From the IMG/VR virus record IMGVR_UViG_3300022866_000322, positions 62,001 through 126,000 of that record: DNA of 64,000 nt. One strand, given 5' to 3'. Position 1 is the first letter of the stretch, and every line of letters starts with the position of its first letter. Both the position numbers and the translations under genes were made by a program. Shown here one piece after another: positions 483 through 46,645 of this stretch. A model generated the notes under the pieces. It saw only the letters and a list, made by a program, of their open reading frames with translations, searched no databases and had not been told where the DNA came from.

Positions 483-572
483 GGAAGTGTGGCCGAGTGG
501 CTTAAGGCGGGAGATTACTAATCTCTTGTACGTGCAAACGTACCGTGGGTTCGAATCCTACCACTTCCGCCA
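483..572 (+). tRNA. tRNA-Ser, anticodon ACU (unusual A34), long variable arm, encoded CCA
   Basis: Acceptor GGAAGTG/CACTTCC with G73 and CCA; anticodon arm GGAGA-TTACTAA-TCTCT (ACT at 517-519); variable arm GTACG...CGTAC; T loop TTCGAAT. Confidence 0.9.
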
Positions 573-602
573 AATGTTTTAACAAGATACAATGGAGATA
601 GT

Positions 603-758
603 ATGACAGTTAATAAGAAGAACAGCCCATTAACATATGAATCAGGCAAGCTAAGACTCGGTCCATTAAGCACAGGAAAACTAGAAGAAATGTTGAAAAC
701 TTGTAGACCAAGACACAAGAACAAAATTATTAACGAGATAGCAAAGAGAAGTAAATAA
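603..758 (+). CDS. Small basic hypothetical protein (51 aa) between tRNAs
   Basis: GGAGA Shine-Dalgarno at 594-598; MTVNKKNSPLTYESGKLRLGPLSTGKLEEMLKTCRPRHKNKIINEIAKRSK; below the ORF-track cutoff. Confidence 0.6.
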   Translation: MTVNKKNSPLTYESGKLRLGPLSTGKLEEMLKTCRPRHKNKIINEIAKRSK

Positions 759-764
759 ACGCAT

Positions 765-841
765 GCTGGTGTAGCTCAGTTGGTAGTAGCGCCTGCTTTG
801 TAAGCAGGATGTCGGGAGTTCGAGTCTCTCCTCCAGCACCA
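765..841 (+). tRNA. tRNA-Thr(UGU), encoded CCA
   Basis: GCTGGTG...CTCCAGC-A-CCA; anticodon arm CCTGC-TTTGTAA-GCAGG; T arm GGGAG-TTCGAGT-CTCTC. Confidence 0.9.
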
Positions 842-846
842 ACCTT

Positions 847-921
847 GTCCGGTTCGTCTATCGGTTAGGACTCGGGATTTTCATTCCCGCAAGAGGGGTT
901 CGACTCCCCTACCGGATGCCA
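847..921 (+). tRNA. tRNA-Glu(UUC), encoded CCA
   Basis: GTCCGGT...ACCGGAT-G-CCA; anticodon arm CGGGA-TTTTCAT-TCCCG; T arm AGGGG-TTCGACT-CCCCT. Confidence 0.9.
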
Positions 922-3353: not shown

Positions 3354-4511
3354 ATGGCAGAGCTCAACAAAGAGTTCTTCTGCCCAGCTCCCTTTGCAGG
3401 AGGTTATGTTGACGTAAAGAAGATAGCATATCCTTGCTGTAAAATACGTGTAACAGAATTTGAAAATGATCCAGGTTGCGACTTAACTAAAAACAACCTA
3501 TCAACAGCATATCATAGTAAATCTTTTAAAGATCTGAGGGAACAGTTCGAAAACAATGAGAAACCTGATCAATGTCAGGAATGTTGGCGTGCCGAAGACG
3601 CAGGTTGTGAGAGTGAAAGAAATCACCTAACTAAGTTAATCACTACTGATACAAACAGTTTGAATTCGGCTAACGTAGGACTTAAAAAGTTACAAATAGT
3701 GCCGAGTATCACCTGCAATTTCAAATGTAGAATTTGCGACAGTAATTTTAGTTCAGCTATTGCTATGGAAGAAATAAAATTTGCAGAGGCCGCAAATAAA
3801 GAAAAACTTTTATTAAATTTGCAAAATCGCAGTCTAATAGACATAGAATACACTAAAAGAATATTGCAAGACAGTTTATCTGGTTTGACAATGTTACAAG
3901 TATTGGGTGGCGAGCCGACACTGATGAAAAACTTGCCAGAGCTACTAGAGTATATAATTGCACAAGGAGATCACAAACACATAGACCTTGCAATTAACAC
4001 CAATGGCAGTATTTGGTCTGACCGTTTAACGGAAATACTACAAAAATTTAAAAGTTGTAAAATGCTAATTAGCATAGATGCTTTTGGTAAAAGATTTGAA
4101 GATCAACGTGGGGGTTGTTGGCAAGATATTGAAGATAATTTCGACAGATGGTTGACTGTTCCAAACGTTTCTGTAATAATAACAGCAACAGTCAGCATAC
4201 AAAATGTATTATATGTAGATGAAATTGTAGACTTTGTAAAAAGTAAAGGAGTTTTTGTAGGTTGGAATTATGTAGATGACCCTAGTGAATTATCCATAGA
4301 TAACTTAACACAGACGGCAAAAGACTTGGTATACTTGAAGTACATAAATCACGAATCTAACGAGTTGCATGGTATTGCTACTCGGGTAATGCAAACTCCA
4401 GCAGTGTCTGGACAGAAATTTATTAGCCTAATGGACCTTTACGATTTACGTAGAGGTACTAACTTTAAACAATCACATGGAGAGATATATGATGCAATGT
4501 CAGCTAAGTAG
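3354..4511 (+). CDS. Radical SAM protein with N-terminal twitch/SPASM-like Cys cluster
   Basis: CNFKCRIC (CX3CX2C), LGGEPTL, NTNG; N-terminal CPAPF...YPCC...QCQECW. Confidence 0.85.
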   Translation: MAELNKEFFCPAPFAGGYVDVKKIAYPCCKIRVTEFENDPGCDLTKNNLSTAYHSKSFKDLREQFENNEKPDQCQECWRAEDAGCESERNHLTKLITTDTNSLNSANVGLKKLQIVPSITCNFKCRICDSNFSSAIAMEEIKFAEAANKEKLLLNLQNRSLIDIEYTKRILQDSLSGLTMLQVLGGEPTLMKNLPELLEYIIAQGDHKHIDLAINTNGSIWSDRLTEILQKFKSCKMLISIDAFGKRFEDQRGGCWQDIEDNFDRWLTVPNVSVIITATVSIQNVLYVDEIVDFVKSKGVFVGWNYVDDPSELSIDNLTQTAKDLVYLKYINHESNELHGIATRVMQTPAVSGQKFISLMDLYDLRRGTNFKQSHGEIYDAMSAK

Positions 4512-4530
4512 TTTTATAGGAGACGCAATA

Positions 4531-4917
4531 GTGAACTGGAAAGAACGACTTGTAGGAGCAGTGGGTAGTTTAATAGCAATATGTTTATTGATGTGGTTGA
4601 TCATTGCAACCATTCCTGCACATGCAGGAGTAACAGGAACAGCCGCACCAGGATCAGGTGCTAACGTAAAGCCAGCAGGTGAACTGGTAATTAAGAACAA
4701 CTACTGTGTAGCATGCCACAATGTAAATGTTAAAATGGTAGGTCCGGCATTTAAAGACATAGCCGCAAAGTACACAGAAGCTGACAGAGAGTATTTGGTT
4801 GAAAAGATACTCAAAGGCAGTATGGGTGTATGGGGTCAGATTCCTATGCCACCAAATGCTGTAGACCAACAGCAAGCAAATCAAGCAATTACTTGGATCC
4901 TAAGCCTTGAAAAATAG
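4531..4917 (+). CDS. Secreted class I cytochrome c (c551/c552-like)
   Basis: AGGAG SD and GTG start; signal peptide ending PAHA; CVACH heme motif (4705-4719); VGPAFKDIAAKY; GVWGQIPMPPN (axial Met). Confidence 0.9.
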   Translation: MNWKERLVGAVGSLIAICLLMWLIIATIPAHAGVTGTAAPGSGANVKPAGELVIKNNYCVACHNVNVKMVGPAFKDIAAKYTEADREYLVEKILKGSMGVWGQIPMPPNAVDQQQANQAITWILSLEK

Positions 4918-5702: not shown

Positions 5703-5921
5703 TTGGCAAAGGAAGAACTACTAACATTCGAAGGTGAAATAACAGACCTTCTACCAAACGCAAGTTTTCGTGTTAAGTTAGAAAACGATCACGAAATTAT
5801 AGCCACACTTGCTGGCAAACTAAGACGATTTAACATTAGAGTAGCACTTGGTGACAAGGTTGATATTGAAATGAGTCCATATGATTTAAACCGCGGACGC
5901 ATAGTATATCGCACTAAATAG
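5703..5921 (+). CDS. infA: Translation initiation factor IF-1
   Basis: [28 protein letters not shown]...[33 protein letters not shown]; TTG start. Confidence 0.95.
5914..5920 (+). promoter_or_regulatory. Late promoter motif CTAAATA, 5 nt before the SOD start codon
   Basis: CTAAATA-gtagt-ATG with no SD. Confidence 0.55.
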
Positions 5922-5925
5922 TAGT

Positions 5926-6507
5926 ATGCTTACTACAGAACTTATACCCAATCAGACGTACACTTCAGAGGATACTACTTGTCCTCGAACTAAAGCGGCG
6001 GCTTGCCAATGTGAGTCTGTTAATGCAATCTCAGAGGATCAAGATTTTACACAAGCAGTATGTGAACTAGACCACAGTGACAAAGTCAAAGGTACTATTC
6101 TTTTAGTTAGCAAACCTGGAAAAGGCACACTGATCCGAGGACAAATAACGGGCCTTGAACCCGGAGAGCACGGGTTTCACATACACGAGTATGGTGATCT
6201 AAGCAACGGATGCGAAAGTGCTGGGGCTCATTACAATCCAGACGGTGTAGACCACGGTGACATCAGCAAAGGACATGTAGGCGATCTAGGTAATGTTATT
6301 GCTAATGACAAAGGTGTTGCTAACTTTATGATAAAGGCACCCCGAGTGGATCTAACAGGAGATCGGAGTGTTGTAGGTAGAGCAATAGTAATACATAGCA
6401 AACAAGATGACCTTGGAAAAGGCGGAGACGAAGAATCATTGAAGACTGGGAATGCTGGTGATCGACTGGCATGTGGAGTTATAGTCTTACGTGGTTCTGA
6501 TGATTAG
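5926..6507 (+). CDS. sodC: Cu/Zn superoxide dismutase with N-terminal extension
   Basis: GFHIHEYGD, GAHYNP, HG...HVGDLGN, VIHSKQDDLG, GNAGDRLACGVI. Confidence 0.95.
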   Translation: MLTTELIPNQTYTSEDTTCPRTKAAACQCESVNAISEDQDFTQAVCELDHSDKVKGTILLVSKPGKGTLIRGQITGLEPGEHGFHIHEYGDLSNGCESAGAHYNPDGVDHGDISKGHVGDLGNVIANDKGVANFMIKAPRVDLTGDRSVVGRAIVIHSKQDDLGKGGDEESLKTGNAGDRLACGVIVLRGSDD

Positions 6508-6552
6508 TGATGTCTACCTAATGGTTAATGGTACTTTTGTATTGGAGAATTT

Positions 6553-6702
6553 ATGAATACTAAAGGAATATGCAGAGCATGCTTGCATGCCGCACACTGT
6601 GGACACAGTTGTGTAGATGAACACTGCGACTACTGCACAGAATGTTATTGTGAAAAATGCAACCCTATAAAGGAAGAACATTATGGAAATATTAACAGTT
6701 GA
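6553..6702 (+). CDS. Cys/His-rich 49-aa peptide, metallothionein-like
   Basis: GGAG SD; [49 protein letters not shown] (9 Cys, 5 His); missed by the ORF track. Confidence 0.7.
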
Positions 6703-7015
6703 ACAAAGCGCAACAAGTAAACTAAAAGAACTTATCGCAGAAGAAGACAACCCAAACCTTAAACTGCGTATATTTGTGCAAGGTGGCGGCTGTAGTGGCT
6801 TCCAATATGGGTTTACATTCGACGAAGACACTGCTGATGATGATTACAGCATAGATGCCGGTGACGGAGTTGGTATTCTAATAGATCATATGAGTGCAGA
6901 ATACCTTAAAGGTTCCACAATCAAGTTCACAAAGGATTTGATGAGCCAAAGTTTTGCTATTGTCAACCCTAATGCTACAGCAACTTGCGGATGTGGAAGC
7001 AGTTTTAACGCATAA
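6683..7015 (+). CDS. erpA: A-type Fe-S carrier (ErpA/IscA/HesB family)
   Basis: [20 protein letters not shown] and [14 protein letters not shown]. Confidence 0.92.
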
Positions 7016-7071: not shown

Positions 7072-10000
7072 ATGGCACAACAAATAATTGATATCGGAAC
7101 GTCCGCAGGTGACGGGACCGGTGACGAACTTCGAATAGCGTTTGATAAAGCAAATGATAACTTTACTGAACTATACTCTACCGCCGAAAACAGTGGACTA
7201 ACTTATTCGAATGTATCTACCATCACAAGTGGATCAGGTACAGACGCTAGATTTACAGTCAATCGTTACGCTAACACCTATACTGTTGATATTATTAACA
7301 GTGCTGGTAACAACTATGCTGTATCAGATACACTAACGATATTTGGTAACGCACTAGGTGGCACGTCGGGCGTAAATGATGTAACTCTTACAGTCCTCAC
7401 ACTAGGAAACGCAACAGTAGGAAACATTGCTACCATAAGCAATGTTGGTGCTCCTGCTAATCCAGTTCTCACTGTCAACGGGCAGACTGGAGATGTAACA
7501 CTAGACGTAAACGATATTGCAAATGCCGCAAGCAAAGGTTATGTAACCAATGCTATAAACGGTAACATTGCAACCTTAAGCTCAAGCTTCAACAGTGTTA
7601 ACGCCAACGTTACCGCGGCAAACAGTGCCATATCAACTCATACAAGTCAGATACAAACACTAGACGCCAACGTTGGTACACTATGGGGCAACGTAGGAGG
7701 ATTGGCCGCTACTAGAGCAACCATAAGTTATGTCGACACCAGCATCAACAACGCACTAAGCTCAAATGCTATTCTTGCCAACGTTACTAGTATCAATGCT
7801 AATGTTACTGCCGCAAATGTAAACATTGAAAACAACAGAGCCAATTTGGTAATATTCCGTGCTAACTTAGGTGTGCAGGATCTGCTGTTGGATGCGCTTG
7901 ATGCTAATGTAGGCACAATTGTTGGCAATACCAGTACTACATTCTACACACTGGTGGCCAATGCCGCTACACAAAGTGTTGCAATTACCAACAATCTTAA
8001 TCAGATAAACAACTTATTCAGCAATGCTGGGGTACAAGCAGACTCAATTAACAATCTAACTGCTAATGCCGCTACACAAGGTGCCAAGCTCGATTCGATC
8101 GATGCAAACTTGGGTGTGGCAACAACCAATATCTCAGCATTACAAAGCAACACTGGTGTTACAACAAACGAAGTTAACCTACTTCGTGCAAACATCACAG
8201 CCGCCAATGCAACTATTGGAAGCAACGATGCAGACATACTAGCAATTAATGCTAACTTGGGTTTGAGATCAACTGAGATTATTTCGTTAGATGCCAACCT
8301 TGGCACAGCAACAACCAATATCACAAGCCTTACCAGTAATGCCGCTACGCAGGCCACTAGCATTAACACACTTACTAGTAATGCCGCTACACAAGCAACT
8401 AGTATTGACACCTTAACTGCTAACGCAGGCACACAGGCTACTAGTATTGTTACACTCACATCAAACGCCGCGGCACAAAGTGTTGCACTTGTTGACCTGC
8501 AAAACAATGCAGGCGTACAAGGCGATAGTATTCGCACAATTGATGCCAATCTTGGCACGGTTGTTGGTACAACTATCCCTGCTATTGATGCTAACTTAGG
8601 AGCGTATCAAACAACTATTAACGCTAACCTGGGCACAAGAACAACTGAAATACAAACACTAGATGCTAACGTAGGTTACATCAGAACAAACTATGCAAAC
8701 ACTGCAACCAGCGCAACATTCACAGGCAATGTGGGTGCTTCCTATCTACTAGCAACTGCCAATGTTAAAATTGACGGTGTACTTGAAGTTGGATTAGCAC
8801 CAAGTTTATCTTGGCCCAACGAAGGTGCTGTGTTTACAGGTAACATAAATGCTGGTTACGAAATAGTTACACAGAACAAGAGTACTGGTACGAGCGCAAC
8901 ATCAAATTATGTTGCATACGCTAATGATGCTATACTTGGTAGTGGAGCTACCAAATACGTAGCTGTTGGCATAAACAACAGCACATTTACAGGAAACTTT
9001 ATACCTGCAGGGGTTGACAGCAAGATAGTACAATATGCACACGACGGATATTTCCAAACCGTTGGAGGCAATGCCCAGGTACAATCAGACACAGGCGTAG
9101 TTTTACAAGCAAACACAGCTTTGGCAAAACTAAACAAAGACGGCAACTTCCAACTTGTTACTGGTAACTTAACGTTTGCTGACAGTACTATACAGTCAAG
9201 TGCATTTACTGGAGGAACCTGGGCAGCCGTAGATGCTAATATCGGTGGCATAAGTGACGGAGTTACCGTTAACAGCAACGCTATATTTGCAATTAGAGCA
9301 AACACTGGATCATTCCAGACTTATGCTAACTTAAATATCAGCCAAATTAATGCAAACATGGCGGCTGCTAATGCTGTTATTGCAACCGTTGATACTGCGG
9401 CAATAGCGGCAATTAATGCAAATGTAACCGCGGCAAATGTAAACATTGCAACACTTGATGCCAATATTGGTGTAGTAGTTGGTACAACTATACCAGGCAT
9501 AAATGCCAACTTAGGTACTGTAGTTGGTACAACTATCCCAGCTATTGATGCTAATTTAGGAACAGCAACTACAAATATTACAACTGTGAATGCTAACGTA
9601 ACTGCCGCAAACTTAGCAATTACCACTGTGAATAATAATGTAACTGCCGCAAACTTAGCAATTACAACAATTGATGCTAATGTAGGTACAATTGTAGGCA
9701 CAACTATTCCTGCTATTGATGCAAACATTGGTACTACTGTTGGTACAACTATCCCAGCAATTGATGCTAATGTAGGTACAATTGTAGGCACAACTATTCC
9801 TGCTATTGATGCTAATGTAGGTACAATTGTAGGCACAACCATACCGTCACTTGCAACTTTGTCAAGTTTCAATACACTTGATGCCAATGTTGGTGTGGTA
9901 GTTGGTACAACTATACCAGGTATAAATGCTAACTTGGGAATTGTAGTTGGCACCACTATACCAGCTATTGATGCTAACTTGGGCACAACTGTTGGCACAA

Positions 10001-12309
10001 CTATCCCAGCAATTGATGCTAACTTAGGCACAGCAACAACTAATATAACAACACTTGATGCTAACGTAGGCACAACTGTTGGCACAACCCTACCAACACT
10101 AAATGCAAATATTGGAGCATACCAAACTTACGCTAATGCTAATTTTAGTGGTAGCACCTATGGTGATGCTAATGTAGCCGCTTATAACGGTAACATGAAC
10201 AACCTGGGCACAGTTACTACAGGAACAATAAACGCAACTACTGGTAATATTACAAACCTTGGTGCCACACTGACTACAGTCGCGCAACCAAATATCACAA
10301 GTGTAGGGCAGTTGACCTCACTGAATGTGTTTGGCAACGCCATTGTTAACGGTAACTTAACGGTTGCAAACCTAAACAGTATTGCAAGTCACACAATTAA
10401 CGTACAAGACCCATTGTTGTACTTGACTGCAAATACAGTATATCCATACAACTACGACATTGGTACGTTTAGTCAATTCGTTGGTGGGTCCGCTAATGTT
10501 TATCAACACACAGGTGTTGTGCGTGATTACACCGACAGCACTTGGAAAGTATTCAGTAATGTTGATGCAGAACCTGGTGCAACAATAAACTGGGCAGACA
10601 CAGACATAATATGGGATAGATTAAGAGTTGGTAACTTAACAATTGCCAACACCACAGCATCAACAACCTCCACAACTGGAGCATTGATACTTGCAGGTGG
10701 TGCTGGCGTAGCAGGAGCAATTAATTCCGCAGGAAACGTTGGAGCTCCGCATGTAAATGCTACAACCTCAATACAAGCACCCACTATCAATGCCGCTACA
10801 AGTTTAACAGCAGTAGCCGCAACAATCAGTGCTAATGCAAGTGTAAATCATCTTAATGCTACAACATCAATACAAGCACCCACTATCAATGCCGCTACTG
10901 CACTTACAGCAGTAGCCGCAACAATCAGTGCAAATGCAAGTGTAAACCATCTTAATGCTACAACCTCAATACAAGCACCCACTATCAATGCCGCTACTGC
11001 ACTTACAGCAGTAGCCGCTACAATTAGTGCTAACGTAGGTGCAAGTCATGTAAACGTAACAAACTCATTGCAAGCTACTACTGTTAACGGTGATACAGTA
11101 AATGCTGGCACATTACAAATTGGTGCCGGTAGTATTACTGCTACAGCGGCAGAGCTTAACGTTCTTGATAATGCTGTAGCAGATACCGTAGTAAGTAGTA
11201 AGGGTGTAATTTACAGTTCAGCAGGTAATATCAGAGCAAATGCATTTAACACAACTGGAAGTTTACAAGCAGTTACAGTAAACGCTACTGGAAACGTAGG
11301 CGGAGTACACTTGAATGCAACCACAAGTGTACAAGCACCAACTATTAATGCCGCTACAAGTTTAACAGCCGTGGCTGCAACGATTAGTGCTAACGCCGCT
11401 GTAAATCACTTGAATGCAACTACAAGCGTACAAGCACCAACTATCAACGCCGCTACAAGTTTAACAGCAGTGGCTGCAACAATCAGTGCAAATGCAAGTG
11501 TAAATCACTTGAATGCAACCACAAGTGTACAAGCACCAACTATTAATGCCGCTACAGCACTTACAGCAGTGGCCGCAACAATCAGTGCTAACTTAGCCGC
11601 AAGTCATGTAAATGTAACCAACACAGTACAAGCTGCCACAGTAAACGGAACCACAGCAGTAACGGGAGCCGCAGGTACGTTCAGTGCTAATGTAGGTGCC
11701 AATCATGTCATTGCCTCAACAAGCATGCAGGCACCAACTATTAATGCCGCTACAGCACTTACAGCAGTGGCCGCAACAATCAGTGCAAATGCAAGTGTAA
11801 ATCACTTGAATGCAACCACAAGTGTACAAGCACCAACTATTAATGCCGCTGGAAACGTAAGCGCGATACACGGAAACTTCAGTGGCAACGTTTCAGCGAC
11901 ATACTTTGCAGGTACTGCTACTGGAGCTCTATATGCTGACTTGGCAGAGAATTATCAGGCAGATACTACATACGATCCAGGTACTGTATTGGTATTTGGC
12001 GGTGAACAGGAAGTTACAGTTACAACTGTATCACATGATGAAAGAGTAGCAGGTATTGTTAGTACAAATCCAGCCTACTTGATGAACACAGGCGGCGGAA
12101 GTGTTGCAGTTGGACTTACAGGACGTTTACCGTGTATGGTTCAAGGACCAGTTAACAAAGGTACACTGCTAGTAACAAGCGCGACGCCAGGTGTTGCTGT
12201 AGCATTGGACAGGACACAGTATCAGCCGGGATGTGTTATTGGTAAGAGCTTAGAAATAATTGAAGACAACTCTGTTGCACTAATTGAAGTAGCAGTAGGT
12301 AGATACTAA
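7072..12309 (+). CDS. Long tail fibre/adhesin-like structural protein with C-terminal chaperone-like domain
   Basis: N-terminal IDIGTSAGDGTGDELRIAFDKANDNFTELY (T4 gp9/gp10-type baseplate-attachment motif); A/T/N/G-rich repeats; C-terminal YADLAENY...STNPAYLMN...GRLPC domain typical of fibre intramolecular chaperones. Confidence 0.85.
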   Translation: MAQQIIDIGTSAGDGTGDELRIAFDKANDNFTELYSTAENSGLTYSNVSTITSGSGTDARFTVNRYANTYTVDIINSAGNNYAVSDTLTIFGNALGGTSGVNDVTLTVLTLGNATVGNIATISNVGAPANPVLTVNGQTGDVTLDVNDIANAASKGYVTNAINGNIATLSSSFNSVNANVTAANSAISTHTSQIQTLDANVGTLWGNVGGLAATRATISYVDTSINNALSSNAILANVTSINANVTAANVNIENNRANLVIFRANLGVQDLLLDALDANVGTIVGNTSTTFYTLVANAATQSVAITNNLNQINNLFSNAGVQADSINNLTANAATQGAKLDSIDANLGVATTNISALQSNTGVTTNEVNLLRANITAANATIGSNDADILAINANLGLRSTEIISLDANLGTATTNITSLTSNAATQATSINTLTSNAATQATSIDTLTANAGTQATSIVTLTSNAAAQSVALVDLQNNAGVQGDSIRTIDANLGTVVGTTIPAIDANLGAYQTTINANLGTRTTEIQTLDANVGYIRTNYANTATSATFTGNVGASYLLATANVKIDGVLEVGLAPSLSWPNEGAVFTGNINAGYEIVTQNKSTGTSATSNYVAYANDAILGSGATKYVAVGINNSTFTGNFIPAGVDSKIVQYAHDGYFQTVGGNAQVQSDTGVVLQANTALAKLNKDGNFQLVTGNLTFADSTIQSSAFTGGTWAAVDANIGGISDGVTVNSNAIFAIRANTGSFQTYANLNISQINANMAAANAVIATVDTAAIAAINANVTAANVNIATLDANIGVVVGTTIPGINANLGTVVGTTIPAIDANLGTATTNITTVNANVTAANLAITTVNNNVTAANLAITTIDANVGTIVGTTIPAIDANIGTTVGTTIPAIDANVGTIVGTTIPAIDANVGTIVGTTIPSLATLSSFNTLDANVGVVVGTTIPGINANLGIVVGTTIPAIDANLGTTVGTTIPAIDANLGTATTNITTLDANVGTTVGTTLPTLNANIGAYQTYANANFSGSTYGDANVAAYNGNMNNLGTVTTGTINATTGNITNLGATLTTVAQPNITSVGQLTSLNVFGNAIVNGNLTVANLNSIASHTINVQDPLLYLTANTVYPYNYDIGTFSQFVGGSANVYQHTGVVRDYTDSTWKVFSNVDAEPGATINWADTDIIWDRLRVGNLTIANTTASTTSTTGALILAGGAGVAGAINSAGNVGAPHVNATTSIQAPTINAATSLTAVAATISANASVNHLNATTSIQAPTINAATALTAVAATISANASVNHLNATTSIQAPTINAATALTAVAATISANVGASHVNVTNSLQATTVNGDTVNAGTLQIGAGSITATAAELNVLDNAVADTVVSSKGVIYSSAGNIRANAFNTTGSLQAVTVNATGNVGGVHLNATTSVQAPTINAATSLTAVAATISANAAVNHLNATTSVQAPTINAATSLTAVAATISANASVNHLNATTSVQAPTINAATALTAVAATISANLAASHVNVTNTVQAATVNGTTAVTGAAGTFSANVGANHVIASTSMQAPTINAATALTAVAATISANASVNHLNATTSVQAPTINAAGNVSAIHGNFSGNVSATYFAGTATGALYADLAENYQADTTYDPGTVLVFGGEQEVTVTTVSHDERVAGIVSTNPAYLMNTGGGSVAVGLTGRLPCMVQGPVNKGTLLVTSATPGVAVALDRTQYQPGCVIGKSLEIIEDNSVALIEVAVGRY
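8329..8490 (+). repeat. In-frame 14-aa (42 nt) tandem repeats, coiled-coil type
   Basis: LTSNAATQATSINT / LTSNAATQATSIDT / LTANAGTQATSIVT. Confidence 0.8.
9451..10100 (+). repeat. In-frame 15-aa (45 nt) tandem repeats
   Basis: IDANVGTIVGTTIPA-type units; near-identical DNA copies at about 9671 and 9761. Confidence 0.85.
10750..11850 (+). repeat. In-frame 33-aa (99 nt) repeats in blocks
   Basis: HLNATTSIQAPTINAATALTAVAATISANASVN-type units, about 9-10 copies including degenerate ones. Confidence 0.85.
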
Positions 12310-12337: not shown

Positions 12338-14302
12338 ATGGCGTACATTAACATTAACACAGGAGCAGTAGCAAACGACGGAACCGGTGATACTATACGG
12401 TCTGCGTTTGGAACTGTTAATGACAATTTTCAAACATTTAACGAAGGGCTATTTGCAGGCACAAGACAAAGCATAATCAGTGCCGCAAGTGTAACTGGTG
12501 GGTACATTGTATCCAACACCTATGTCCTTGCTTCATCTTATGTTAATGCAGACAGTATTGTGGGCAACACAGTTACCAGTTATGGTAATTTGTTTGTTAG
12601 CCAGGACGGTGCAACCATTGTAGGTAATGTTACTATTGTGGGTAACTTGAGTGTTAGTGGCTCACAATCCAGCAGTGCAAGTCAAAACACAAGTGCTCCT
12701 ATTTTGGACCTACACTTTGATGGTGGTGGACTCAGCAGTGACGACGGCAAAGATATTGGTATTGCCGCACAATACTATGATGTTGCTGAAAAGAAATTCT
12801 TCCTTGGATGGCAGAACACTTCAGAAAGTTTAGTCTACTTAGACAACACAACTGTTGCGTCAAATGTTGTTACAGCAGGCACACCAGGTAATGTACAGTT
12901 TGGTCAATTGATGTTGAGCAACACACTGTCATCAACTTCGAGCACAACAGGTGCATTAATAGTTAAAGGTGGCACAGGTGTTGCTGGTAATGTACACATT
13001 GCTGGAAACTTAGTAACTGCCAACACAGGTACAGTCAGTACAGGCAATATTACCGTTAGAGGCTTCCATGTTGGAAACATGAACTTTAGTGGTGCAGACA
13101 CGATTTATATTAACGGTAGTCCAGTTGTAACTTCAGCTGGTGCGTTCAATGGTGGTACTGTTGGACTAGCGACTACATTCCAATCAGCAACAGCTTCAAC
13201 CAGTAAAACAACTGGTGCTGTGATTATTACAGGTGGATTGGGTGTGTCGGGTAATACCTTTGTAAGTGACATACACGCTGTTGGCACCAATGCGGCATTC
13301 CGTGGAAACCTATTAGGTACACTGAAAACAAATGCACAACCAAGTGTTACCAGTTTAGGTACACTAACAAGTTTAGTAACTTCAGGAATCTTTACTTCTG
13401 GTGGTAACGTAATGCCAAGTGTTACTAATACACATTGGTTGGGCGACAAGAACACAGCCAGATGGGCACAAGTACATGCAGGTACATTAGATGTAACCAC
13501 TATTGCAAGTGCTCCGCAATTTAGTGGTATTCCTAATTTTACAGCAAATGCTGTATATACTAGTGGAACAGCATCTAGTAGTAAAACTAGCGGTGCTATC
13601 GTAGTCACTGGATCAGGTGGTGTTGGCGTTGGCGGAGATGTGCGATCAGCCAAGTTATACGTTGATGCTGGCGTTTTTTGGTCAGGCAACAGTGCTCCAT
13701 TTGCTAGTGTAGGCGGAGCAGATACACAGGTACAGTTTAACGATAACGGTACTCTTGGTGGTGACGCAGGATTAATTTTTAATAAAACAACAAACGATTT
13801 AACTAGCACAGGAAACATAGCCGCAAATCATGTAAATGTAACTAACACAGTGCAAGGTAATATAGTTAATGCAGTGACTGCTATAACAAGTAATACAGGT
13901 GTGTTTACTGGTAATGTATCTGCAAGCTACTTAATAGGTACATCAACACAAGCTCTATATGCTGACTTGGCTGAGAAATATACCACGGACCAAGTCTATG
14001 CACCAGGTACAGTTGTTGTAGTTGGTGGCACAGCAGAAGTAACAGCAAGTTCAGAAGGTCAACGAGCAATTGGTGTTATATCTACAGCACCAGCGTTCTT
14101 AATGAACAAAGATGGAGATGGACAAGCAGTTGCACTAAAAGGGCGTGTACCATGTCGTGTAGTAGGTGCAGTTGCCAAAGGTGACGAGCTAGTACCGGCA
14201 GACAACGGATGTGCAAAAGTAGGCGACAGTAGAGTATTTGGTGTTGCACTAGACACCAGCGCAGAAACTGTAGAAAGAGTTATTGAAATAGTGGTGTTAT
14301 AA
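12338..14302 (+). CDS. Second tail fibre-like protein, paralogue of 7072-12309
   Basis: Same N-terminal GAVANDGTGDTIRSAF motif and C-terminal YADLAEKY...STAPAFLMN...GRVPCRV domain; GTAAATA motif at 12314-12320 upstream. Confidence 0.85.
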   Translation: MAYININTGAVANDGTGDTIRSAFGTVNDNFQTFNEGLFAGTRQSIISAASVTGGYIVSNTYVLASSYVNADSIVGNTVTSYGNLFVSQDGATIVGNVTIVGNLSVSGSQSSSASQNTSAPILDLHFDGGGLSSDDGKDIGIAAQYYDVAEKKFFLGWQNTSESLVYLDNTTVASNVVTAGTPGNVQFGQLMLSNTLSSTSSTTGALIVKGGTGVAGNVHIAGNLVTANTGTVSTGNITVRGFHVGNMNFSGADTIYINGSPVVTSAGAFNGGTVGLATTFQSATASTSKTTGAVIITGGLGVSGNTFVSDIHAVGTNAAFRGNLLGTLKTNAQPSVTSLGTLTSLVTSGIFTSGGNVMPSVTNTHWLGDKNTARWAQVHAGTLDVTTIASAPQFSGIPNFTANAVYTSGTASSSKTSGAIVVTGSGGVGVGGDVRSAKLYVDAGVFWSGNSAPFASVGGADTQVQFNDNGTLGGDAGLIFNKTTNDLTSTGNIAANHVNVTNTVQGNIVNAVTAITSNTGVFTGNVSASYLIGTSTQALYADLAEKYTTDQVYAPGTVVVVGGTAEVTASSEGQRAIGVISTAPAFLMNKDGDGQAVALKGRVPCRVVGAVAKGDELVPADNGCAKVGDSRVFGVALDTSAETVERVIEIVVL

Positions 14303-40676: not shown

Positions 40677-42944
40677 ATGTTACAAACAAATCCTGAAATA
40701 GACTATGTAGTACAAGAAGCAACAAAACTAGCAAAGAGCTACGAGCATGAATACATCACAGTAGAACATGTAATGTTAGCCATGATTAGATACGAGCCGC
40801 TATGCGTTCTGTTTGAAAAATCTCAAATCGATGTAAAAACAATAGATGCAGATTTAAGCCTTTATATTTCTGAACAAGAAGATTTAGTGGTCCAAGGTTG
40901 TGAACCAAGAAAAACACATGCGCTCGAAAGAGTATTTAACAGAGCTTTGACTCAACTATTGTTTAGCGGGCGCACACAGCTACAGTTAATGGACTTGCTG
41001 TTAAGTATACAATCAGAAACAAATAGTTTTGCACAGTACTTTGCTGTAAAGCACGGGCTGACACGTGAAAAAATGTTAGAACTGTTTGCACTTGTTAATG
41101 CAGATGGCGAAAATAAGAAAGTAGTTAATGCAAGCAAAGCAGAAAGAATTTTAGAACACTATTGTGACAACCTTAACAAAAAGGTAGCAGAAGGAAAGAT
41201 AGACCCTGTCATTGGCAGAGAATTTGAGACAAACGAGATCATAGAAGTTATGGCTCGTAAGAATAAAAATAATGTGTTACTAATTGGAGATCCGGGTGTA
41301 GGCAAGACTGCAATTGCAGAAGGGCTTGCACTAGCAATCGAAGCAAATACTGTTCCGGAGTTCTTACAAGGTTACGTTGTTTACAATCTTGACATAGGCT
41401 CGTTGCTTGCTGGTAGCAGGTACAGAGGAGACTTTGAAGAAAAAGTACAAGAAGTTATTAAAGCCTTAACTGTTAAAGGGAAGGCAATACTGTTCATTGA
41501 TGAAGCACACCAAATGAAAGGTGCAGGCTCTACAGGGGCAAACGCAAGTGTAGATTTCAGTAACATGATAAAGCCTGCGATCGGCAAAGGCAAGATCAAA
41601 GTAATGGCTTCTACAACGTGGGAAGAGTATTCAAATAGTTTCGAAAAGGATCGTGCATTGATGCGCAGATTCCAGCGTATTACTGTTGATGAGCCTACAG
41701 CAGAAGTAGCAAAAGAAATACTTACAGGGCTGAAAAGTGTATTTGAAAAGTTCCATGGTGGTACAGTAACAAATGCTTCAATTGATGCGGCCGTTGATCT
41801 TAGTGTCAGATACCAAACAGATAAAAAACTGCCAGACAAGGCAATTGATTTAATCGACAGCACATGTGCCAGGTTAAAACTTAGCACTGCTATTTGGACA
41901 GTTACTAGAGCTGATATTATTGACAGCATTGCTAAGATGACTAAGATTCCTGCTGACCAAATTGGAAACCAGAAAGCAATTGTCAACTTCGAAGCGATTA
42001 TAAAAGAAAAACTGTACGGACAGGATCAAGCAGTTGACACTGTATTGGAAAAAATATATGTAAGTAGAGCTGGCTTGAAAGCAATTAACAAGCCCGTTGG
42101 TAGTTTCTTGTTTACAGGACCAACAGGCACAGGCAAAACAGAACTTGCTAAACTGTTAGCAGAAAACCTAGGCATGAAGTTATTACGTTACGACATGAGC
42201 GAATACCAAGAACGTCACACTGTAGCAAAGTTAGTTGGCGCACCTCCAGGGTACGTAGGCTACGATGACGGAAACTTAGGTGGTGGTATGCTTATTAGTG
42301 ATATCGAAAAGAATCCAAACAGTGTTATATTAATGGATGAGATAGAAAAAGCACATCCAGACGTTACTAATGTGCTATTGCAGATGATGGATGAAGGAAT
42401 GATTACCTCAAGCAACGGTAAGAAAGCAAATTGTCGTAACACAGTTATTATCCTTACCAGTAACCTGGGTGCCGCAGACAACGAAAATAACACAATAGGC
42501 TTTGGTGACGAACTACAAAAAACAGGCGAGGATGACAAAGCAGTTAAGAAGTACTTTGCTCCTGAATTTAGGAATAGACTAGACGGGACTGTGAAGTTCA
42601 AGAAACTTGACGAACTAAGCATGCGTAAGATCGTAACAAAGTATCTAGTAGAAATTAATGATTTACTACTAGATAAAAATCTAAAGGTTAAACTTACAGA
42701 ACCAGCAATAGGTGAACTTGTTGAACAAGGATTTGATCCCAAGATGGGAGCAAGGCCATTGCAACGCAAAATGAACGAAGAAATAAAAGTTCCATTGAGT
42801 AAAAAAATGTTGTTTGAGCCCATTGTGCCCGGTAGCATTATAACTGTAGACTTTCGAGATGATAAATTTACCTTTATTGTAGACTCACCAGAAAACACAA
42901 CACACAAAGTAGACGATGATGGATTTATTATACTGGAAGAATAG
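40677..42944 (+). CDS. clpA: ATP-dependent Clp protease ATP-binding subunit ClpA
   Basis: N-domain HEYITVEH; GDPGVGKT and GPTGTGKT Walker A motifs; IGF loop (NTIGFG); GARPLQR. Confidence 0.92.
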   Translation: MLQTNPEIDYVVQEATKLAKSYEHEYITVEHVMLAMIRYEPLCVLFEKSQIDVKTIDADLSLYISEQEDLVVQGCEPRKTHALERVFNRALTQLLFSGRTQLQLMDLLLSIQSETNSFAQYFAVKHGLTREKMLELFALVNADGENKKVVNASKAERILEHYCDNLNKKVAEGKIDPVIGREFETNEIIEVMARKNKNNVLLIGDPGVGKTAIAEGLALAIEANTVPEFLQGYVVYNLDIGSLLAGSRYRGDFEEKVQEVIKALTVKGKAILFIDEAHQMKGAGSTGANASVDFSNMIKPAIGKGKIKVMASTTWEEYSNSFEKDRALMRRFQRITVDEPTAEVAKEILTGLKSVFEKFHGGTVTNASIDAAVDLSVRYQTDKKLPDKAIDLIDSTCARLKLSTAIWTVTRADIIDSIAKMTKIPADQIGNQKAIVNFEAIIKEKLYGQDQAVDTVLEKIYVSRAGLKAINKPVGSFLFTGPTGTGKTELAKLLAENLGMKLLRYDMSEYQERHTVAKLVGAPPGYVGYDDGNLGGGMLISDIEKNPNSVILMDEIEKAHPDVTNVLLQMMDEGMITSSNGKKANCRNTVIILTSNLGAADNENNTIGFGDELQKTGEDDKAVKKYFAPEFRNRLDGTVKFKKLDELSMRKIVTKYLVEINDLLLDKNLKVKLTEPAIGELVEQGFDPKMGARPLQRKMNEEIKVPLSKKMLFEPIVPGSIITVDFRDDKFTFIVDSPENTTHKVDDDGFIILEE

Positions 42945-45338: not shown

Positions 45339-46241
45339 ATGTTTATTGCTAATTTATTTGAAAACTATGTAAAAGAGAACAACGGCCCGGAAGTGGTAGT
45401 GGTATATCCAGGCCGTTTTCAACCTTTTCACTTAGGACACAAAGAAGTGTTTAACTCACTCCAAAACAAATTTGGACGTGATAATGTTTATATTGCAACC
45501 AGCAACAAAACAGACGGCGCTAAAAGCCCATTTAACTTTTCCGACAAAACCATATTCATGAATGCGGCTGGTGTACCTAGTGATCGCATTATAGAAGTTT
45601 CAAACCCATACGCTTTACCCCAGCAATTCAACCCAGAAAATACTATCTTTGTTGCAGTAGTAGGTAGTCCCGACAAGAATAGACTCAATCCAGATTCAAC
45701 TAAAAAAGACGGTTCGCCAAGTTATTTCAAGATGTTTGATAGTTTTGAAAAAGCTGAAACCGCAGATCGACATGGCTATGTAATCATTGCAGACGAACGC
45801 AATAAACAGATCACCTTAGGTGACGAAACTGTCGATGTTAGCCACGGCACACAGACTAGAGCCGCTTGGAACGCAGTTAGAAAAGATCCGAAACTGCGTT
45901 CCCAATTTTTAAAACAAATGTATGGCAGAGACGATCCAGAAGTTGGTCGTGTACTGGATAAGATTACCGAAACAGTGAATGAGATGGGTGGTGTAGGTGT
46001 AATTGCAAGCAAAGGGCAAGCAAAAGATCCACGCTATAGTATGAGCTTAACCAAAGACATTAGACCAGGTGAAACCAATAGACAGTTAGCGAAGATGGGA
46101 CTGGGCGCAAAAGTCACCAGTCTCGGCGAAGAGATTGCAACACTTAAAGAAAAGTGGAGTGCAAAGTACAAGAAAAGTATCGACTGTAATAACCCTAAGG
46201 GATTTAGTCAAAAAGCACATTGTGCAGGGAAGAAAAAATGA
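45339..46241 (+). CDS. HxGH nucleotidyltransferase fused to short C-terminal basic modules; probable head-packaged protein
   Basis: YPGRFQPFHLGH, SPFNF; C-terminal EKWSAKYKKSIDCNNPKGFSQKAHC module; CTAAATA at 45311. Confidence 0.75.
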   Translation: MFIANLFENYVKENNGPEVVVVYPGRFQPFHLGHKEVFNSLQNKFGRDNVYIATSNKTDGAKSPFNFSDKTIFMNAAGVPSDRIIEVSNPYALPQQFNPENTIFVAVVGSPDKNRLNPDSTKKDGSPSYFKMFDSFEKAETADRHGYVIIADERNKQITLGDETVDVSHGTQTRAAWNAVRKDPKLRSQFLKQMYGRDDPEVGRVLDKITETVNEMGGVGVIASKGQAKDPRYSMSLTKDIRPGETNRQLAKMGLGAKVTSLGEEIATLKEKWSAKYKKSIDCNNPKGFSQKAHCAGKKK

Positions 46242-46645
46242 GAATATTAGAAATTATAGAAGAAGCAAAATCAAGTTGCCCTATTGCAACACAAGACTTA
46301 GAAGTTAACACTGTTAATAGAGACTTTGCACAAGAAAAGTATAACTACGGTCCACTTAATATTGATGAGCCTGGCAATTATTGGGAAGGTGTTGCAAAAG
46401 AATGGGACACTACTGTAGAAGCCGCTAAAGAATCACTTTGCGGAAACTGTGTAGCATTCGATATAAGTCCACGCATGGAAGACTGCATGCCGGGTCCCGT
46501 GAGCGAAGATGGTGGTAGACTAGGTTACTGTTGGATGCACCAATTCAAATGCCACAGTCTAAGAACATGCCACACATGGGCAAAAGGCGGTCCAATTACT
46601 GACGACGAAGTTAGCTATGACTGGGACAAAAGAAGCAATGACTAA
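46238..46645 (+). CDS. Cys-rich protein with capsid-targeting-like N-terminus
   Basis: MRILEIIEE start; CGNC...C...GYCWMHQFKCHSLRTC. Confidence 0.7.
   Translation: MRILEIIEEAKSSCPIATQDLEVNTVNRDFAQEKYNYGPLNIDEPGNYWEGVAKEWDTTVEAAKESLCGNCVAFDISPRMEDCMPGPVSEDGGRLGYCWMHQFKCHSLRTCHTWAKGGPITDDEVSYDWDKRSND

What the first reader, a model, noticed from the sequence alone, without database searches (positions are those of the whole stretch)
6553..6702. Unannotated metallothionein-like peptide between Cu/Zn-SOD and ErpA
Seen: a 49-aa ORF with a GGAG SD, 9 Cys and 5 His within residues 7-43 (CxxC, CxxCxxCxCxxC), overlapping the erpA start. Established: bacterial metallothioneins are short Cys/His-rich Zn/Cu binders. 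Inference: a three-gene metal and oxidative-stress module in which the peptide buffers or delivers Cu/Zn for the SOD and protects Fe-S assembly. An alternative role is as a radical SAM peptide substrate.
Basis: partly seen in the sequence, partly recalled or inferred. Interest (0 to 1): 0.7.

Follow-up and report, generated by a model that had tools for sequence, protein, structure and literature searches.

The report
Phage nine-cysteine metal-binding mini-protein
The 49-codon reading frame is a real, strongly conserved gene of a giant bacterial virus that encodes a tiny protein packed with metal-binding cysteines; it belongs to an undescribed virus-only family that repeatedly sits inside the viruses' own iron-sulfur-cluster assembly genes, so it is more likely tied to that machinery than to the neighbouring copper/zinc superoxide dismutase.

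Summary
It is a 49-aa ORF at 6553-6702 with a GGAG Shine-Dalgarno, 9 Cys and 5 His. It lies between a Cu/Zn SOD and an ErpA gene and overlaps the ErpA start by 20 nt.

The window is part of a 221-kb jumbo-phage record from a salt-lake metagenome.

The ORF is a real gene. More than 100 distinct relatives of 43-74 aa exist, essentially all in viral or metagenomic contigs. All 9 Cys and His15 are invariant, position 12 is always His or Cys, and dN/dS is about 0.1 with saturated synonymous sites.

No Pfam, PHROG, NCBIfam or PDB family matches, including bacterial metallothionein PF02069.

The proposed SOD-peptide-ErpA module is not conserved. Close relatives carry an Fe/Mn SOD, or a glyoxalase-family gene plus a second peptide copy, in the SOD position. 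Complete ErpA-bearing relatives lack the peptide.

About 17% of distinct family members lie directly beside or inside phage IscU/IscA/ErpA clusters, in at least six gene orders. The commonest context is elsewhere.

Best reading: a new phage family of metal-thiolate mini-proteins (3-4 Zn or Cu), acting as an accessory of phage Fe-S supply. Its chemistry is metallothionein-like, but it is not a member of a known family. Metal content and partners remain untested.

The parts
6544..6547 (+). Shine-Dalgarno (GGAG) of the peptide gene, 5 nt before the ATG
   Evidence: Read directly from the sequence.
6553..6702 (+). Gene for the 49-aa nine-cysteine mini-protein, including its stop codon
   Evidence: ORF listed. 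Homologues. Purifying selection, dN/dS about 0.1. Contigs in RNA libraries cover it.
6571..6660 (+). Cys/His core, residues 7-36. It holds 9 invariant Cys, invariant His15, a His-or-Cys position 12 and a His-or-Gln position 18. The first half has the spacing C-x2-C-x4-H-x4-C.
   Evidence: Alignments A2 and A3. The spacing was read by eye.
6670..6676 (+). Shine-Dalgarno-like AAGGAAG of erpA, embedded in the peptide's acidic tail codons
   Evidence: Read directly from the sequence.
6683..6702 (+). 20-nt overlap between the end of the peptide gene and the start of erpA (an arrangement that permits translational coupling). The peptide's last residues are dictated by the erpA N-terminal codons.
   Evidence: The same 20-23-nt overlap occurs in L002, L004 and L007.
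6683..7015 (+). Phage ErpA (A-type Fe-S cluster carrier). Cys37, Cys102 and Cys104 are invariant.
   Evidence: Pfam Fe-S_biosyn. NCBIfam ErpA equivalog at 146 bits. Alignment A4.
5926..6507 (+). Cu/Zn superoxide dismutase with a Cys-containing N-terminal extension of about 50 aa and no evident signal peptide. It occupies a variable slot in relatives.
   Evidence: Pfam Sod_Cu at 153.7 bits. An Fe/Mn SOD occupies the same slot in L004-L008.
5703..5921 (+). Phage-encoded translation initiation factor IF-1, the first gene of the conserved run IF-1, SOD, peptide, ErpA
   Evidence: Pfam eIF-1a. NCBIfam infA equivalog at 101.6 bits. Synteny in L004-L007.

Best explanation
ORF 6553-6702 encodes a member of an undescribed, virus-restricted family of 43-74-aa metal-thiolate mini-proteins.

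Shown:
- It is a protein-coding gene under strong purifying selection.
- Its 30-residue core has nine invariant Cys plus two His/Cys positions.
- The protein is acidic (7 Asp/Glu against 4 Lys/Arg).
- In this lineage it is arranged for co-translation with the phage ErpA.
- Across the family it recurs beside or inside phage IscU/IscA/ErpA clusters in several gene orders.

Inferred:
- The core folds only around metal. It would bind three to four Zn(II), or Cu(I), either as three tetrahedral sites or as a metallothionein-type cluster with 11 ligands.
- In the cell it serves the phage's Fe-S supply line, in which ErpA (and IscU in relatives) feeds at least 10 phage radical SAM enzymes.
- The most likely mechanism is a high-affinity sink for thiophilic metals. 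These metals otherwise occupy the cysteine sites of IscU and A-type carriers and destroy exposed [4Fe-4S] clusters.
- It is not a dedicated Cu/Zn chaperone for the neighbouring SOD.

My confidence by layer:
- Real gene: about 0.97.
- Metal bound through the Cys/His set: about 0.85.
- Functional tie to Fe-S assembly in this lineage: about 0.55.
- Soft-metal-sink mechanism specifically: about 0.3.
For: Real gene and family:
- Homologues were found at each search depth.
- 9 Cys and His15 are invariant, and position 12 is always His or Cys.
- dN/dS is about 0.10.
- RNA-library contigs cover the gene.
- One scan of 185,579 species genomes gave a single hit, on a 3.5-kb contig of a MAG. The family is therefore viral.

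Fe-S link:
- The overlap with erpA is conserved while the upstream gene changes between Cu/Zn SOD, Fe/Mn SOD and a VOC/glyoxalase gene plus a paralogue.
- The peptide also occurs in these orders: peptide-IscU-IscA-ErpA (L108); ErpA on the opposite strand followed by peptide-IscU-IscA (L187; L216 and L242); IscA-peptide-IscU-ErpA (L188; L203); IscU-IscA-peptide-ErpA (L233) and peptide-ErpA (L222).
- It lies 1.5 kb upstream of IscU-IscA-ErpA in L168-L171.
- About 8 of 48 distinct cores in IMG/VR and 9 of 53 in metagenomes are isc-adjacent. My estimate of the chance rate, not computed, is 1-2% for a gene in a genome of about 400 genes with 2-3 isc genes.

Fe-S demand:
- The genome has 10 radical SAM genes over the Pfam cut-off and 14 hits in all.

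Chemistry (established knowledge and literature):
- SmtA binds Zn4 through Cys9His2 (PMC10119931).
- Metallothionein folding depends on metal (PMC3323870).
- Zn blocks Fe-S biogenesis by binding the conserved cysteines of IscU, IscA and ferredoxin (PMC6495748).
- Cu(I), but not reactive oxygen species, damages radical SAM clusters (PMC9576991).
- Phage A-type carrier and IscU genes are known auxiliary genes in radical-SAM-rich phages (PMC5332604, PMC9038755).
Against: - No metal binding has been measured.
- Structure prediction gave no confident fold (pLDDT 57), nor did it with Zn present (pLDDT 56-59).
- The ErpA-peptide complex test gave no answer (score 0.01).
- About five sixths of family members are not near Fe-S genes. 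The commonest context is a 140-aa seven-Cys protein upstream and an unknown 200-aa protein downstream. Others lie between virion and tail-sheath genes.
- In G001 and G002 the peptide lies 19-31 kb from ErpA/IscU.
- Two essentially complete ErpA- and IscU-bearing relatives (343 kb and 329 kb) lack the peptide, so it is dispensable for phage ErpA function.
- The isc-adjacent loci are phylogenetically related, so the enrichment is not a clean statistic.
- The strong conservation of non-ligand residues (Ala14, Gly17, Asp22, Glu23, Asp26, Glu30) is unlike typical metallothioneins. It fits a specific partner-binding or Fe-S-binding protein equally well.
Confidence: 0.45

Rival explanations
1. The mini-protein binds iron or an Fe-S cluster rather than Zn/Cu. 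It would act within the phage ISC module as a compact electron donor, replacing ferredoxin, or as an iron donor or cluster store for IscU/ErpA.
For: - It sits immediately 5' of IscU or ErpA in at least six architectures.
- No phage IscS or ferredoxin was seen in the records searched, so other accessory roles are open.
- It is small and acidic, like IscX, CyaY and rubredoxins (read from the sequence).
- It contains a C-x2-C-x-C element, as in the CIAPIN1 domain of anamorsin (recalled, not tested).
- Small viral Cys/His proteins can bind either Fe-S or Zn, as HBx does (PMC9010755, abstract seen).
Against: - It has no ferredoxin-type CxxCxxCxxxCP motif and no hit to any Fe-S family in Pfam or NCBIfam.
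- Nine Cys in 30 residues is denser than any known cubane-binding fold and typical of metal-thiolate clusters (established knowledge).
- Most family members are not near isc genes.
Confidence: 0.2
2. It is a structural zinc mini-domain (three Zn sites, the first a CCHC-type knuckle) that acts as a protein-binding adaptor or inhibitor of an unknown host or phage target unrelated to Fe-S assembly. On this reading its position next to erpA is incidental, as expected for a mobile small gene.
For: - Non-ligand residues are strongly conserved.
- Subsets of the family carry conserved N-terminal (MENxIDDNxAYxRLK) and C-terminal (GYN) motifs, which suggest docking.
- Contexts are very variable, including structural modules.
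- The peptide is absent from complete ErpA-bearing relatives.
- The spacing C7-x2-C10-x4-H15-x4-C20 equals the CCHC knuckle spacing (read by eye).
Against: - Adjacency to isc genes survives several rearrangements in both subfamilies.
- Pfam zf-CCHC and other zinc-finger models are not matched at E up to 1, apart from one B-box hit at E 0.71.
- The protein is acidic, so it is not a nucleic-acid-binding knuckle.
Confidence: 0.2
3. It is a Cu and/or Zn chaperone or buffer that metallates the adjacent cytoplasmic Cu/Zn SOD.
For: - It is directly downstream of a Cu/Zn SOD that lacks a signal peptide and so would need cytoplasmic Cu and Zn.
- Its composition is rich in Cys and His.
Against: - Relatives 63-80% identical keep the peptide and the ErpA overlap with an Fe/Mn SOD, or with no SOD, in that slot.
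- Only 5 of 48 distinct IMG/VR cores have any SOD upstream.
Confidence: 0.05
4. It is a ribosomally made precursor peptide modified by one of the phage's many radical SAM enzymes (a sactipeptide- or ranthipeptide-like product).
For: - The genome has at least 10 radical SAM genes. Two of them, in the window, have an N-terminal twitch/SPASM-type auxiliary-cluster domain.
- The size and Cys-rich composition resemble SCIFF-type precursors (recalled).
Against: - No radical SAM gene is adjacent to the peptide in about 170 loci.
- Relatives have 9-16 radical SAM genes with or without the peptide.
- The nearest one in the window lies 2 kb upstream, behind five unrelated genes.
- There is no leader/core architecture: the whole Cys core is invariant, His residues included.
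Confidence: 0.05
5. It is a Cys-codon-rich leader ORF whose translation merely regulates erpA, through coupling or cysteine sensing. The product itself would have no function.
For: - The 20-nt overlap with erpA and the erpA Shine-Dalgarno inside the ORF.
- Nine Cys codons upstream of a gene for a cysteine-ligated carrier.
Against: - Amino-acid-level conservation of His, Gly, Asp and Glu, with saturated synonymous change.
- Most family members precede unrelated genes or stand alone.
Confidence: 0.03

Closest known systems
Bacterial metallothioneins of the BmtA/SmtA type (Pfam PF02069)
   Same: Both are small (about 50-56 aa), cytoplasmic and rich in Cys with contributing His. SmtA uses 9 Cys plus 2 His to hold a Zn4 cluster (PMC10119931). 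This family conserves 9 Cys plus 2 His/Cys positions.
   Different: There is no sequence relationship: PF02069 finds nothing in the genome or in 39 family members. The Cys spacing differs. Non-ligand residues are far more conserved. The family is virus-only. The zinc-finger fold that defines BmtA could not be tested because models were poor.
Animal metallothionein domains (beta: M3Cys9; alpha: M4Cys11). Recalled from established knowledge.
   Same: The ligand density is the same (9-11 ligands in about 30 residues), so metal-thiolate clusters with bridging cysteines are geometrically plausible.
   Different: This family contains His, aromatic residues and an invariant acidic pattern. It has no CC or repeated CxC motifs of the animal type. 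No homology was detected.
CCHC zinc knuckle (C-x2-C-x4-H-x4-C) and Zn3Cys9 cluster domains (pre-SET, CXC). Recalled.
   Same: Residues C7, C10, H15 and C20 have exactly the knuckle spacing. Nine invariant Cys is the number used by Zn3Cys9 clusters.
   Different: No Pfam zinc-finger, pre-SET or CXC model is matched. The protein is acidic, not basic. Subfamily B shortens the first spacing to C-x-C.
Small accessory proteins of Fe-S assembly operons (ferredoxin Fdx, IscX, CyaY; eukaryotic anamorsin/CIAPIN1)
   Same: It sits within or at the head of IscU/IscA/ErpA gene clusters. It is small and acidic.
   Different: It is unrelated in sequence. It has no ferredoxin motif. It is present in only a minority of phage isc clusters. 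Its function is untested.
Phage auxiliary Fe-S genes (A-type carrier, IscU), as described in marine viral genomes
   Same: The neighbouring erpA, and the radical-SAM-rich genome, match the published picture of phages that carry Fe-S supply genes along with many Fe-S client enzymes (PMC5332604, PMC9038755).
   Different: In the passages I read, those papers do not mention a Cys-rich mini-protein linked to these genes.
SCIFF/ranthipeptide-type radical SAM precursor peptides. Recalled.
   Same: About 45-50 aa with many Cys, in a genome rich in radical SAM enzymes that have auxiliary-cluster domains.
   Different: No adjacent maturase anywhere in the family, and no co-occurrence signal.

Membership tests
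Bacterial metallothionein BmtA/SmtA (PF02069) | Match to the family profile | tested here: not met
   PF02069 searched over the whole 221-kb genome in six frames at E up to 10 gave no match, while the control rang in Synechococcus elongatus. None of 39 family members hits it at E up to 1.
Bacterial metallothionein BmtA/SmtA (PF02069) | Zn4 cluster ligated by 9 Cys and 2 His | not testable with these tools
   The ligand count fits: 9 invariant Cys, His15, and a His/Cys at position 12. Actual metal stoichiometry needs ICP-MS, native MS or NMR.
Bacterial metallothionein BmtA/SmtA (PF02069) | Zinc-finger (treble-clef-like) fold around site A (PMC3323870) | tested here: inconclusive
   The AlphaFold2 model had pLDDT 57. 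ESMFold2 with 4 Zn gave pLDDT 56-59. Both are too poor for a fold comparison.
Metallothioneins in the broad, compositional sense | Low molecular mass, high Cys content, no catalytic domain | tested here: met
   49 aa, with 9 Cys in a 30-residue core. No domain was found in any library.
Metallothioneins in the broad, compositional sense | Binds several metal ions in metal-thiolate clusters | not testable with these tools
   Requires expression and metal analysis.
CCHC zinc knuckle (zf-CCHC) | C-x2-C-x4-H-x4-C spacing | tested here: met
   C7, C10, H15 and C20 are invariant in subfamily A. In subfamily B the first spacing is C-x-C.
CCHC zinc knuckle (zf-CCHC) | Match to the Pfam profile; basic, nucleic-acid-binding character | tested here: not met
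   No zf-CCHC hit at E up to 1 for any member. The protein has 7 acidic against 4 basic residues (read from the sequence).
RiPP precursor of a radical SAM maturase (sactipeptide/ranthipeptide/SCIFF type) | Maturase gene adjacent to, and co-occurring with, the precursor gene | tested here: not met
   No radical SAM gene is among the immediate neighbours in about 170 loci. Radical SAM counts are similar in relatives with and without the peptide.
Accessory component of ISC-type Fe-S assembly gene clusters | Conserved gene neighbourhood with IscU or an A-type carrier | tested here: inconclusive
   The peptide is adjacent in at least six gene orders and in both subfamilies. However, this holds for only about 17% of distinct members, and the peptide is absent from complete isc-bearing relatives.
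Accessory component of ISC-type Fe-S assembly gene clusters | Physical interaction with IscU or ErpA | tested here: inconclusive
   Complex prediction with ErpA, 4 Zn and the peptide scored 0.01, which the tool reports as 'no answer'.
ErpA (the neighbouring gene) | Profile match above the equivalog cut-off, and the three cluster-ligating Cys | tested here: met
   NF010147 scored 146.1 bits against a cut-off of 117. Cys37, Cys102 and Cys104 are invariant in 39 phage homologues.

The most novel reading that the evidence does not exclude
The family is a previously unrecognised, phage-specific accessory factor of ISC-type iron-sulfur cluster assembly. It would be a 30-residue metal-cluster module that works directly on IscU and A-type carriers. 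It could strip inhibitory Zn or Cu from their cysteine sites, or it could donate electrons or iron. Phages would insert it into their own isc operons to keep a large set of radical SAM enzymes supplied during infection.
Probability: 0.25. Interest if true: 0.75.

Novelty: new variant of a known kind. Interest (0 to 1): 0.5.

Why it matters
Phage-borne Fe-S carrier genes are already known as auxiliary genes. No small Cys-rich partner of them appeared in the papers I searched, and I found no report of a phage metallothionein-like family.

If the protein is a soft-metal sink or another helper of IscU/ErpA, three things follow:
- It would add a component to a well-studied pathway.
- It would show how radical-SAM-rich jumbo phages protect their metallo-enzymes.
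- It would provide a very small, highly conserved metal-cluster module for bioinorganic study.

If it turns out to be a generic zinc mini-domain, the result is still a clean definition of a widespread unannotated phage gene family.

Tried and rejected
Searches with no informative match:
- Pfam, PHROGs and NCBIfam on the peptide and on all 39 aligned members. The only hits were noise: B-box at E 0.71, zf_DPOE_2 at E 0.26.
- A PDB sequence-profile search gave nothing at E up to 10.
- The GenBank phage collection gave no DNA match. tblastn gave only spurious E=10 hits in Staphylococcus phage terminases.

Structure and complex prediction:
- AlphaFold2 on the family alignment gave pLDDT 57, so no fold search was attempted.
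- The complex prediction with ErpA and Zn gave no answer.

Other lines followed:
- ESM Atlas returned only viral hypothetical clusters. The nearest named cluster, YgbA_NO at 0.79, is below lead level.
It was repeated with A6 and gave one hit, in a MAG contig.
- I suspected that the commonest upstream neighbour, a 140-aa protein with 7 conserved Cys, is HiPIP-like. Pfam, PHROGs and PDB do not support this. AlphaFold2 gave pLDDT 44. Atlas gives only faint HiPIP links (feature score 0.72, TM 0.46-0.50). This remains a lead.
- The commonest downstream neighbour, an unknown protein of about 200 aa, has no family and no telling motif.
- Radical SAM co-occurrence shows no correlation with the peptide.
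- A phage IscS was not found.
- The antisense ORF 6514-6831 (105 aa) is the shadow of the two real genes and was set aside.
Full report
**What is there.**
- The window is positions 62001-126000 of a 221-kb IMG/VR virus record. CheckV puts it at 63% complete, so the phage is a jumbo phage of roughly 350 kb.
- Near-identical DNA is held by salt-lake metagenome runs.
- The window also carries a T4-type DNA polymerase, a large AAA+ protease, fibre-like giants and three tRNAs.
- Around the finding, all on the + strand and tightly packed, lie these genes:
  - IF-1 (5703-5921)
  - a Cu/Zn SOD (5926-6507)
  - the 49-aa ORF (6553-6702)
  - ErpA (6683-7015)
  - a 1745-aa fibre-like protein starting at 7072
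GGAG lies at 6544-6547. There are nine Cys (residues 7, 10, 16, 20, 25, 28, 31, 33, 36) and five His (12, 15, 18, 24, 43). The ORF overlaps erpA by 20 nt.
- erpA has its own AAGGAAG at 6670-6676, inside the peptide's Lys-Glu-Glu codons. The peptide's last six residues are simply the +2 frame of the erpA N-terminus.

**Is it a gene?**
- Cys density alone would not settle this. Shuffled windows reach at most 7 Cys per stop-free 30 codons against 9 here. However, antisense frames of the repetitive fibre gene reach 9-11.
- Conservation settles it.
  - A first search found six homologues at 63-80% identity.
  - A profile search of 1.84 billion representatives found three more distant ones.
  - A profile search of the 5.8-billion-protein set found 68 clusters of 43-74 aa. 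None has a Pfam domain, and any source name given is 'hypothetical protein'.
  - Scans of IMG/VR and of JGI metagenomes returned 80 loci each.
- In a 39-sequence alignment, C7, C10, H15, C16, C20, C25, C28, C31, C33 and C36 are invariant. Position 12 is always His or Cys, and position 18 is His or Gln. Ala14, Gly17, Asp22, Glu23, Asp26 and Glu30 are conserved in most members (Gly17 and Asp26 in at least 90%).
- Over the 30 core codons, synonymous sites are saturated while dN is 0.06-0.39. Median dN/dS is 0.10.
- Two metatranscriptome runs of one marine study each hold short contigs at least 98% identical across 6472-6733, and across erpA. Salt-marsh metatranscriptomes hold the IF-1/SOD part. 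This is consistent with transcription, but DNA carry-over cannot be excluded.

**What family is it?**
- None that is described.
- Pfam, PHROGs and NCBIfam give no match for any of 39 members.
- The PDB sequence profile search is empty.
- The bacterial metallothionein model PF02069 finds nothing in the genome while its positive control rings.
- A scan of one genome for each of 185,579 prokaryote species found a single hit, on a 3.5-kb contig binned into a Polynucleobacter MAG. The family is therefore essentially viral.
- Two subfamilies are visible.
  - Subfamily A, which includes the window, begins its core C-x2-C-x-H.
  - Subfamily B begins its core C-x-C-x-C and often has an N-terminal 'MENxIDDNxAYxRLK' stretch.
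- Structure prediction failed, as expected for a fold that needs metal: pLDDT 57 alone and 56-59 with four Zn.

**Testing the proposed SOD-peptide-ErpA module.**
- The overlap with erpA is conserved in the close relatives, but the upstream slot is not.
  - L004-L008 have an Fe/Mn SOD there.
  - L002 and L003 have no SOD. Instead they carry a second, 66-aa paralogue of the peptide. In L003 a glyoxalase-family gene precedes that paralogue.
- Among 80 phage ErpA loci, the gene directly upstream is usually one of four: an Fe/Mn SOD, IF-1, IscU, or a large (about 780-aa) protein with a C-terminal CxxC tail that I did not identify. Only the window's clade has the peptide there.
- Two essentially complete relatives (343 kb and 329 kb) have ErpA and IscU but no peptide.
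- A role specific to Cu/Zn SOD is therefore very unlikely, and the peptide is not required for phage ErpA function.

**Where the family sits.**
- Over about 170 loci, the commonest arrangement has a 140-aa protein with seven conserved Cys upstream (41 loci) and an unknown protein of about 200 aa downstream (53 loci).
- Other recurrent neighbours are a basic 84-aa protein, a virion protein with a tail sheath gene, and a glyoxalase-family protein.
- The window's own genome has the 140-aa protein 40 kb away, at 46238-46645.
- Against this background one theme recurs. The peptide is found directly beside or inside phage Fe-S assembly genes in many different gene orders:
  - SOD or glyoxalase, then peptide-ErpA (the window's clade)
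  - peptide-IscU-IscA-ErpA (L108)
  - ErpA on the opposite strand, then peptide-IscU-IscA (L187; L216 and L242)
  - IscA-peptide-IscU-ErpA (L188; L203)
  - IscU-IscA-peptide-ErpA (L233) and peptide-ErpA (L222)
  - 1.5 kb upstream of IscU-IscA-ErpA, across three opposite-strand genes (L168-L171)
- About 8 of 48 distinct cores in IMG/VR and 9 of 53 in metagenomes are in this state, and both subfamilies are represented.
- For a genome of about 400 genes with 2-3 isc genes, I estimate chance adjacency at 1-2%. That figure is not computed, and the loci are not phylogenetically independent.
- The persistence of adjacency through rearrangements is the best functional clue. It is partial, however: in G001 and G002 the peptide lies 19-31 kb from ErpA/IscU.

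**How it most likely works.**
- Shown: the gene, its conservation, its ligand set, its acidity, the coupling-type overlap with erpA, the recurrent isc neighbourhood, and a genome with 10 radical SAM genes over the Pfam cut-off and 14 hits in all.
- Inferred from established chemistry:
  - Eleven conserved thiolate/imidazole ligands in 30 residues cannot form an ordinary hydrophobic core.
  - They fit either of two arrangements. The first is three tetrahedral sites, of which the first (C7, C10, H15, C20) has the CCHC-knuckle spacing. The second is a metallothionein-type cluster.
  - The known numbers match. Animal metallothionein domains use Cys9 for M3 and Cys11 for M4 (recalled). SmtA uses Cys9His2 for Zn4 (PMC10119931).
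  - His ligands favour Zn (PMC3323870).
- Why this would sit with IscU and ErpA:
  - Zn blocks Fe-S biogenesis in E. coli by binding the conserved cysteines of IscU, IscA and ferredoxin (PMC6495748).
  - Cu(I), but not superoxide or peroxide, destroys the clusters of radical SAM enzymes (PMC9576991).
  - A high-affinity sink for thiophilic metals, made in step with the carrier, would protect the phage's Fe-S supply. The neighbouring SOD and glyoxalase-family genes fit a variable stress island.
- I hold the soft-metal-sink mechanism at about 0.3. I hold the broader statement, a metal-thiolate mini-protein functionally tied to phage Fe-S supply, at about 0.45-0.55.

**Rivals.**
- An Fe- or Fe-S-binding electron or iron donor within the ISC module (0.2). 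The position argues for it. The absence of any ferredoxin motif and the extreme Cys density argue against it.
- A structural zinc adaptor or inhibitor with an unrelated target (0.2). The conserved non-ligand residues, the docking-like terminal motifs and the very variable contexts favour it.
The swaps of SOD type contradict it.
- A radical SAM substrate (0.05). No maturase is adjacent in about 170 loci, and relatives have 9-16 radical SAM genes whether or not they carry the peptide.
- A mere Cys-codon leader ORF (0.03). Amino-acid-level selection and the non-erpA contexts contradict it.
- The complex prediction of ErpA with the peptide and Zn returned 'no answer' and is not evidence either way.

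**Comparison with the known, and novelty.**
- Phage-encoded A-type carriers and IscU are published auxiliary genes of radical-SAM-rich marine phages (PMC5332604, PMC9038755), so that part is ordinary.
- The mini-protein works like a metallothionein in composition and ligand count. It fails the one testable membership criterion of the bacterial metallothionein family, the profile match. It also differs in the strong conservation of non-ligand residues.
- In my literature searches I found no description of a phage metallothionein-like protein or of a Cys-rich partner of phage isc genes. The absence of a paper in this library is not proof of novelty.
- I class it as a new variant of a known kind: a new, virus-only family of metal-thiolate mini-proteins with a new genomic association.
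- I set interest at 0.5. The family and its isc linkage are solid and testable, but its chemistry and role are still inferred.

Noticed in passing
window 5926-6507: The Cu/Zn SOD has an N-terminal extension of about 50 aa with four Cys and no obvious signal peptide. It would therefore be cytoplasmic, unlike bacterial SodC. In close relatives the same slot holds an Fe/Mn SOD, a non-orthologous replacement.
   Followed up: partly
window 3354-4511 and 58470-60035; G000 as a whole: Two radical SAM genes belong to the 'N-terminal twitch domain' subfamily (NF033640, about 250 bits). The auxiliary-cluster (SPASM-type) domain lies before the radical SAM core. The 221-kb record has 10 radical SAM genes over the Pfam cut-off and 14 hits in all, with seven in a row at G000 155-163 kb. 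Related jumbo phages have 9-16.
   Followed up: partly
window 46238-46645: A 135-aa protein with seven conserved Cys. Its homologue is the commonest gene directly upstream of the mini-protein in other phages. Atlas shows a very large viral family. Models of similar fold are fused to ferritin, portal or prohead-protease proteins. There are faint HiPIP links. No Pfam, PHROG or PDB match, and the AlphaFold2 model is poor.
   Followed up: partly
window 4477-4917: A phage-encoded c-type cytochrome with a CVACH haem motif. Pfam Cytochrom_C matches at E 6e-7, and there is a weak cytochrome c551 match. A hydrophobic N-terminal segment precedes it.
   Followed up: no
window 5703-5921: A phage-encoded translation initiation factor IF-1 with a TTG start (infA equivalog, 101.6 bits). 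In many related phages IF-1 lies directly upstream of ErpA.
   Followed up: partly
window 7072-12309 and 12338-14302: Giant fibre-like proteins of 1745 and 654 aa, built of Ala/Asn/Thr-rich repeats. They share a C-terminal domain (phrog_22593). Their antisense frames produce spurious Cys-rich ORFs.
   Followed up: no
L002 179-379 and L003 508-708: A 66-aa paralogue of the mini-protein lies in tandem, directly upstream of the 50-aa copy. It has the same Cys/His pattern with an insertion after HCG. It takes the place of the SOD gene.
   Followed up: partly
window 483-921: A cluster of three tRNA genes: Ser-ACT (an unusual anticodon as called by ARAGORN), Thr-TGT and Glu-TTC. All three are confirmed as tRNAs by Rfam.
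   Followed up: no
L093-L107 (e.g. L093 4107-4325) and L097 565-717: In one phage lineage the mini-protein overlaps a conserved protein of about 72 aa with no family. A very basic 50-aa protein ending in YRGQGR follows. This small basic protein recurs downstream of subfamily-B peptides in 11 metagenome loci.
   Followed up: no
window 40677-42944: A 755-aa two-domain AAA+ 'ATP-dependent protease' homologue (phrog_4871, E 1e-238), probably ClpA/ClpB-like. The literature on phage Fe-S auxiliary genes notes ClpP as targeting Fe-S proteins.
   Followed up: no
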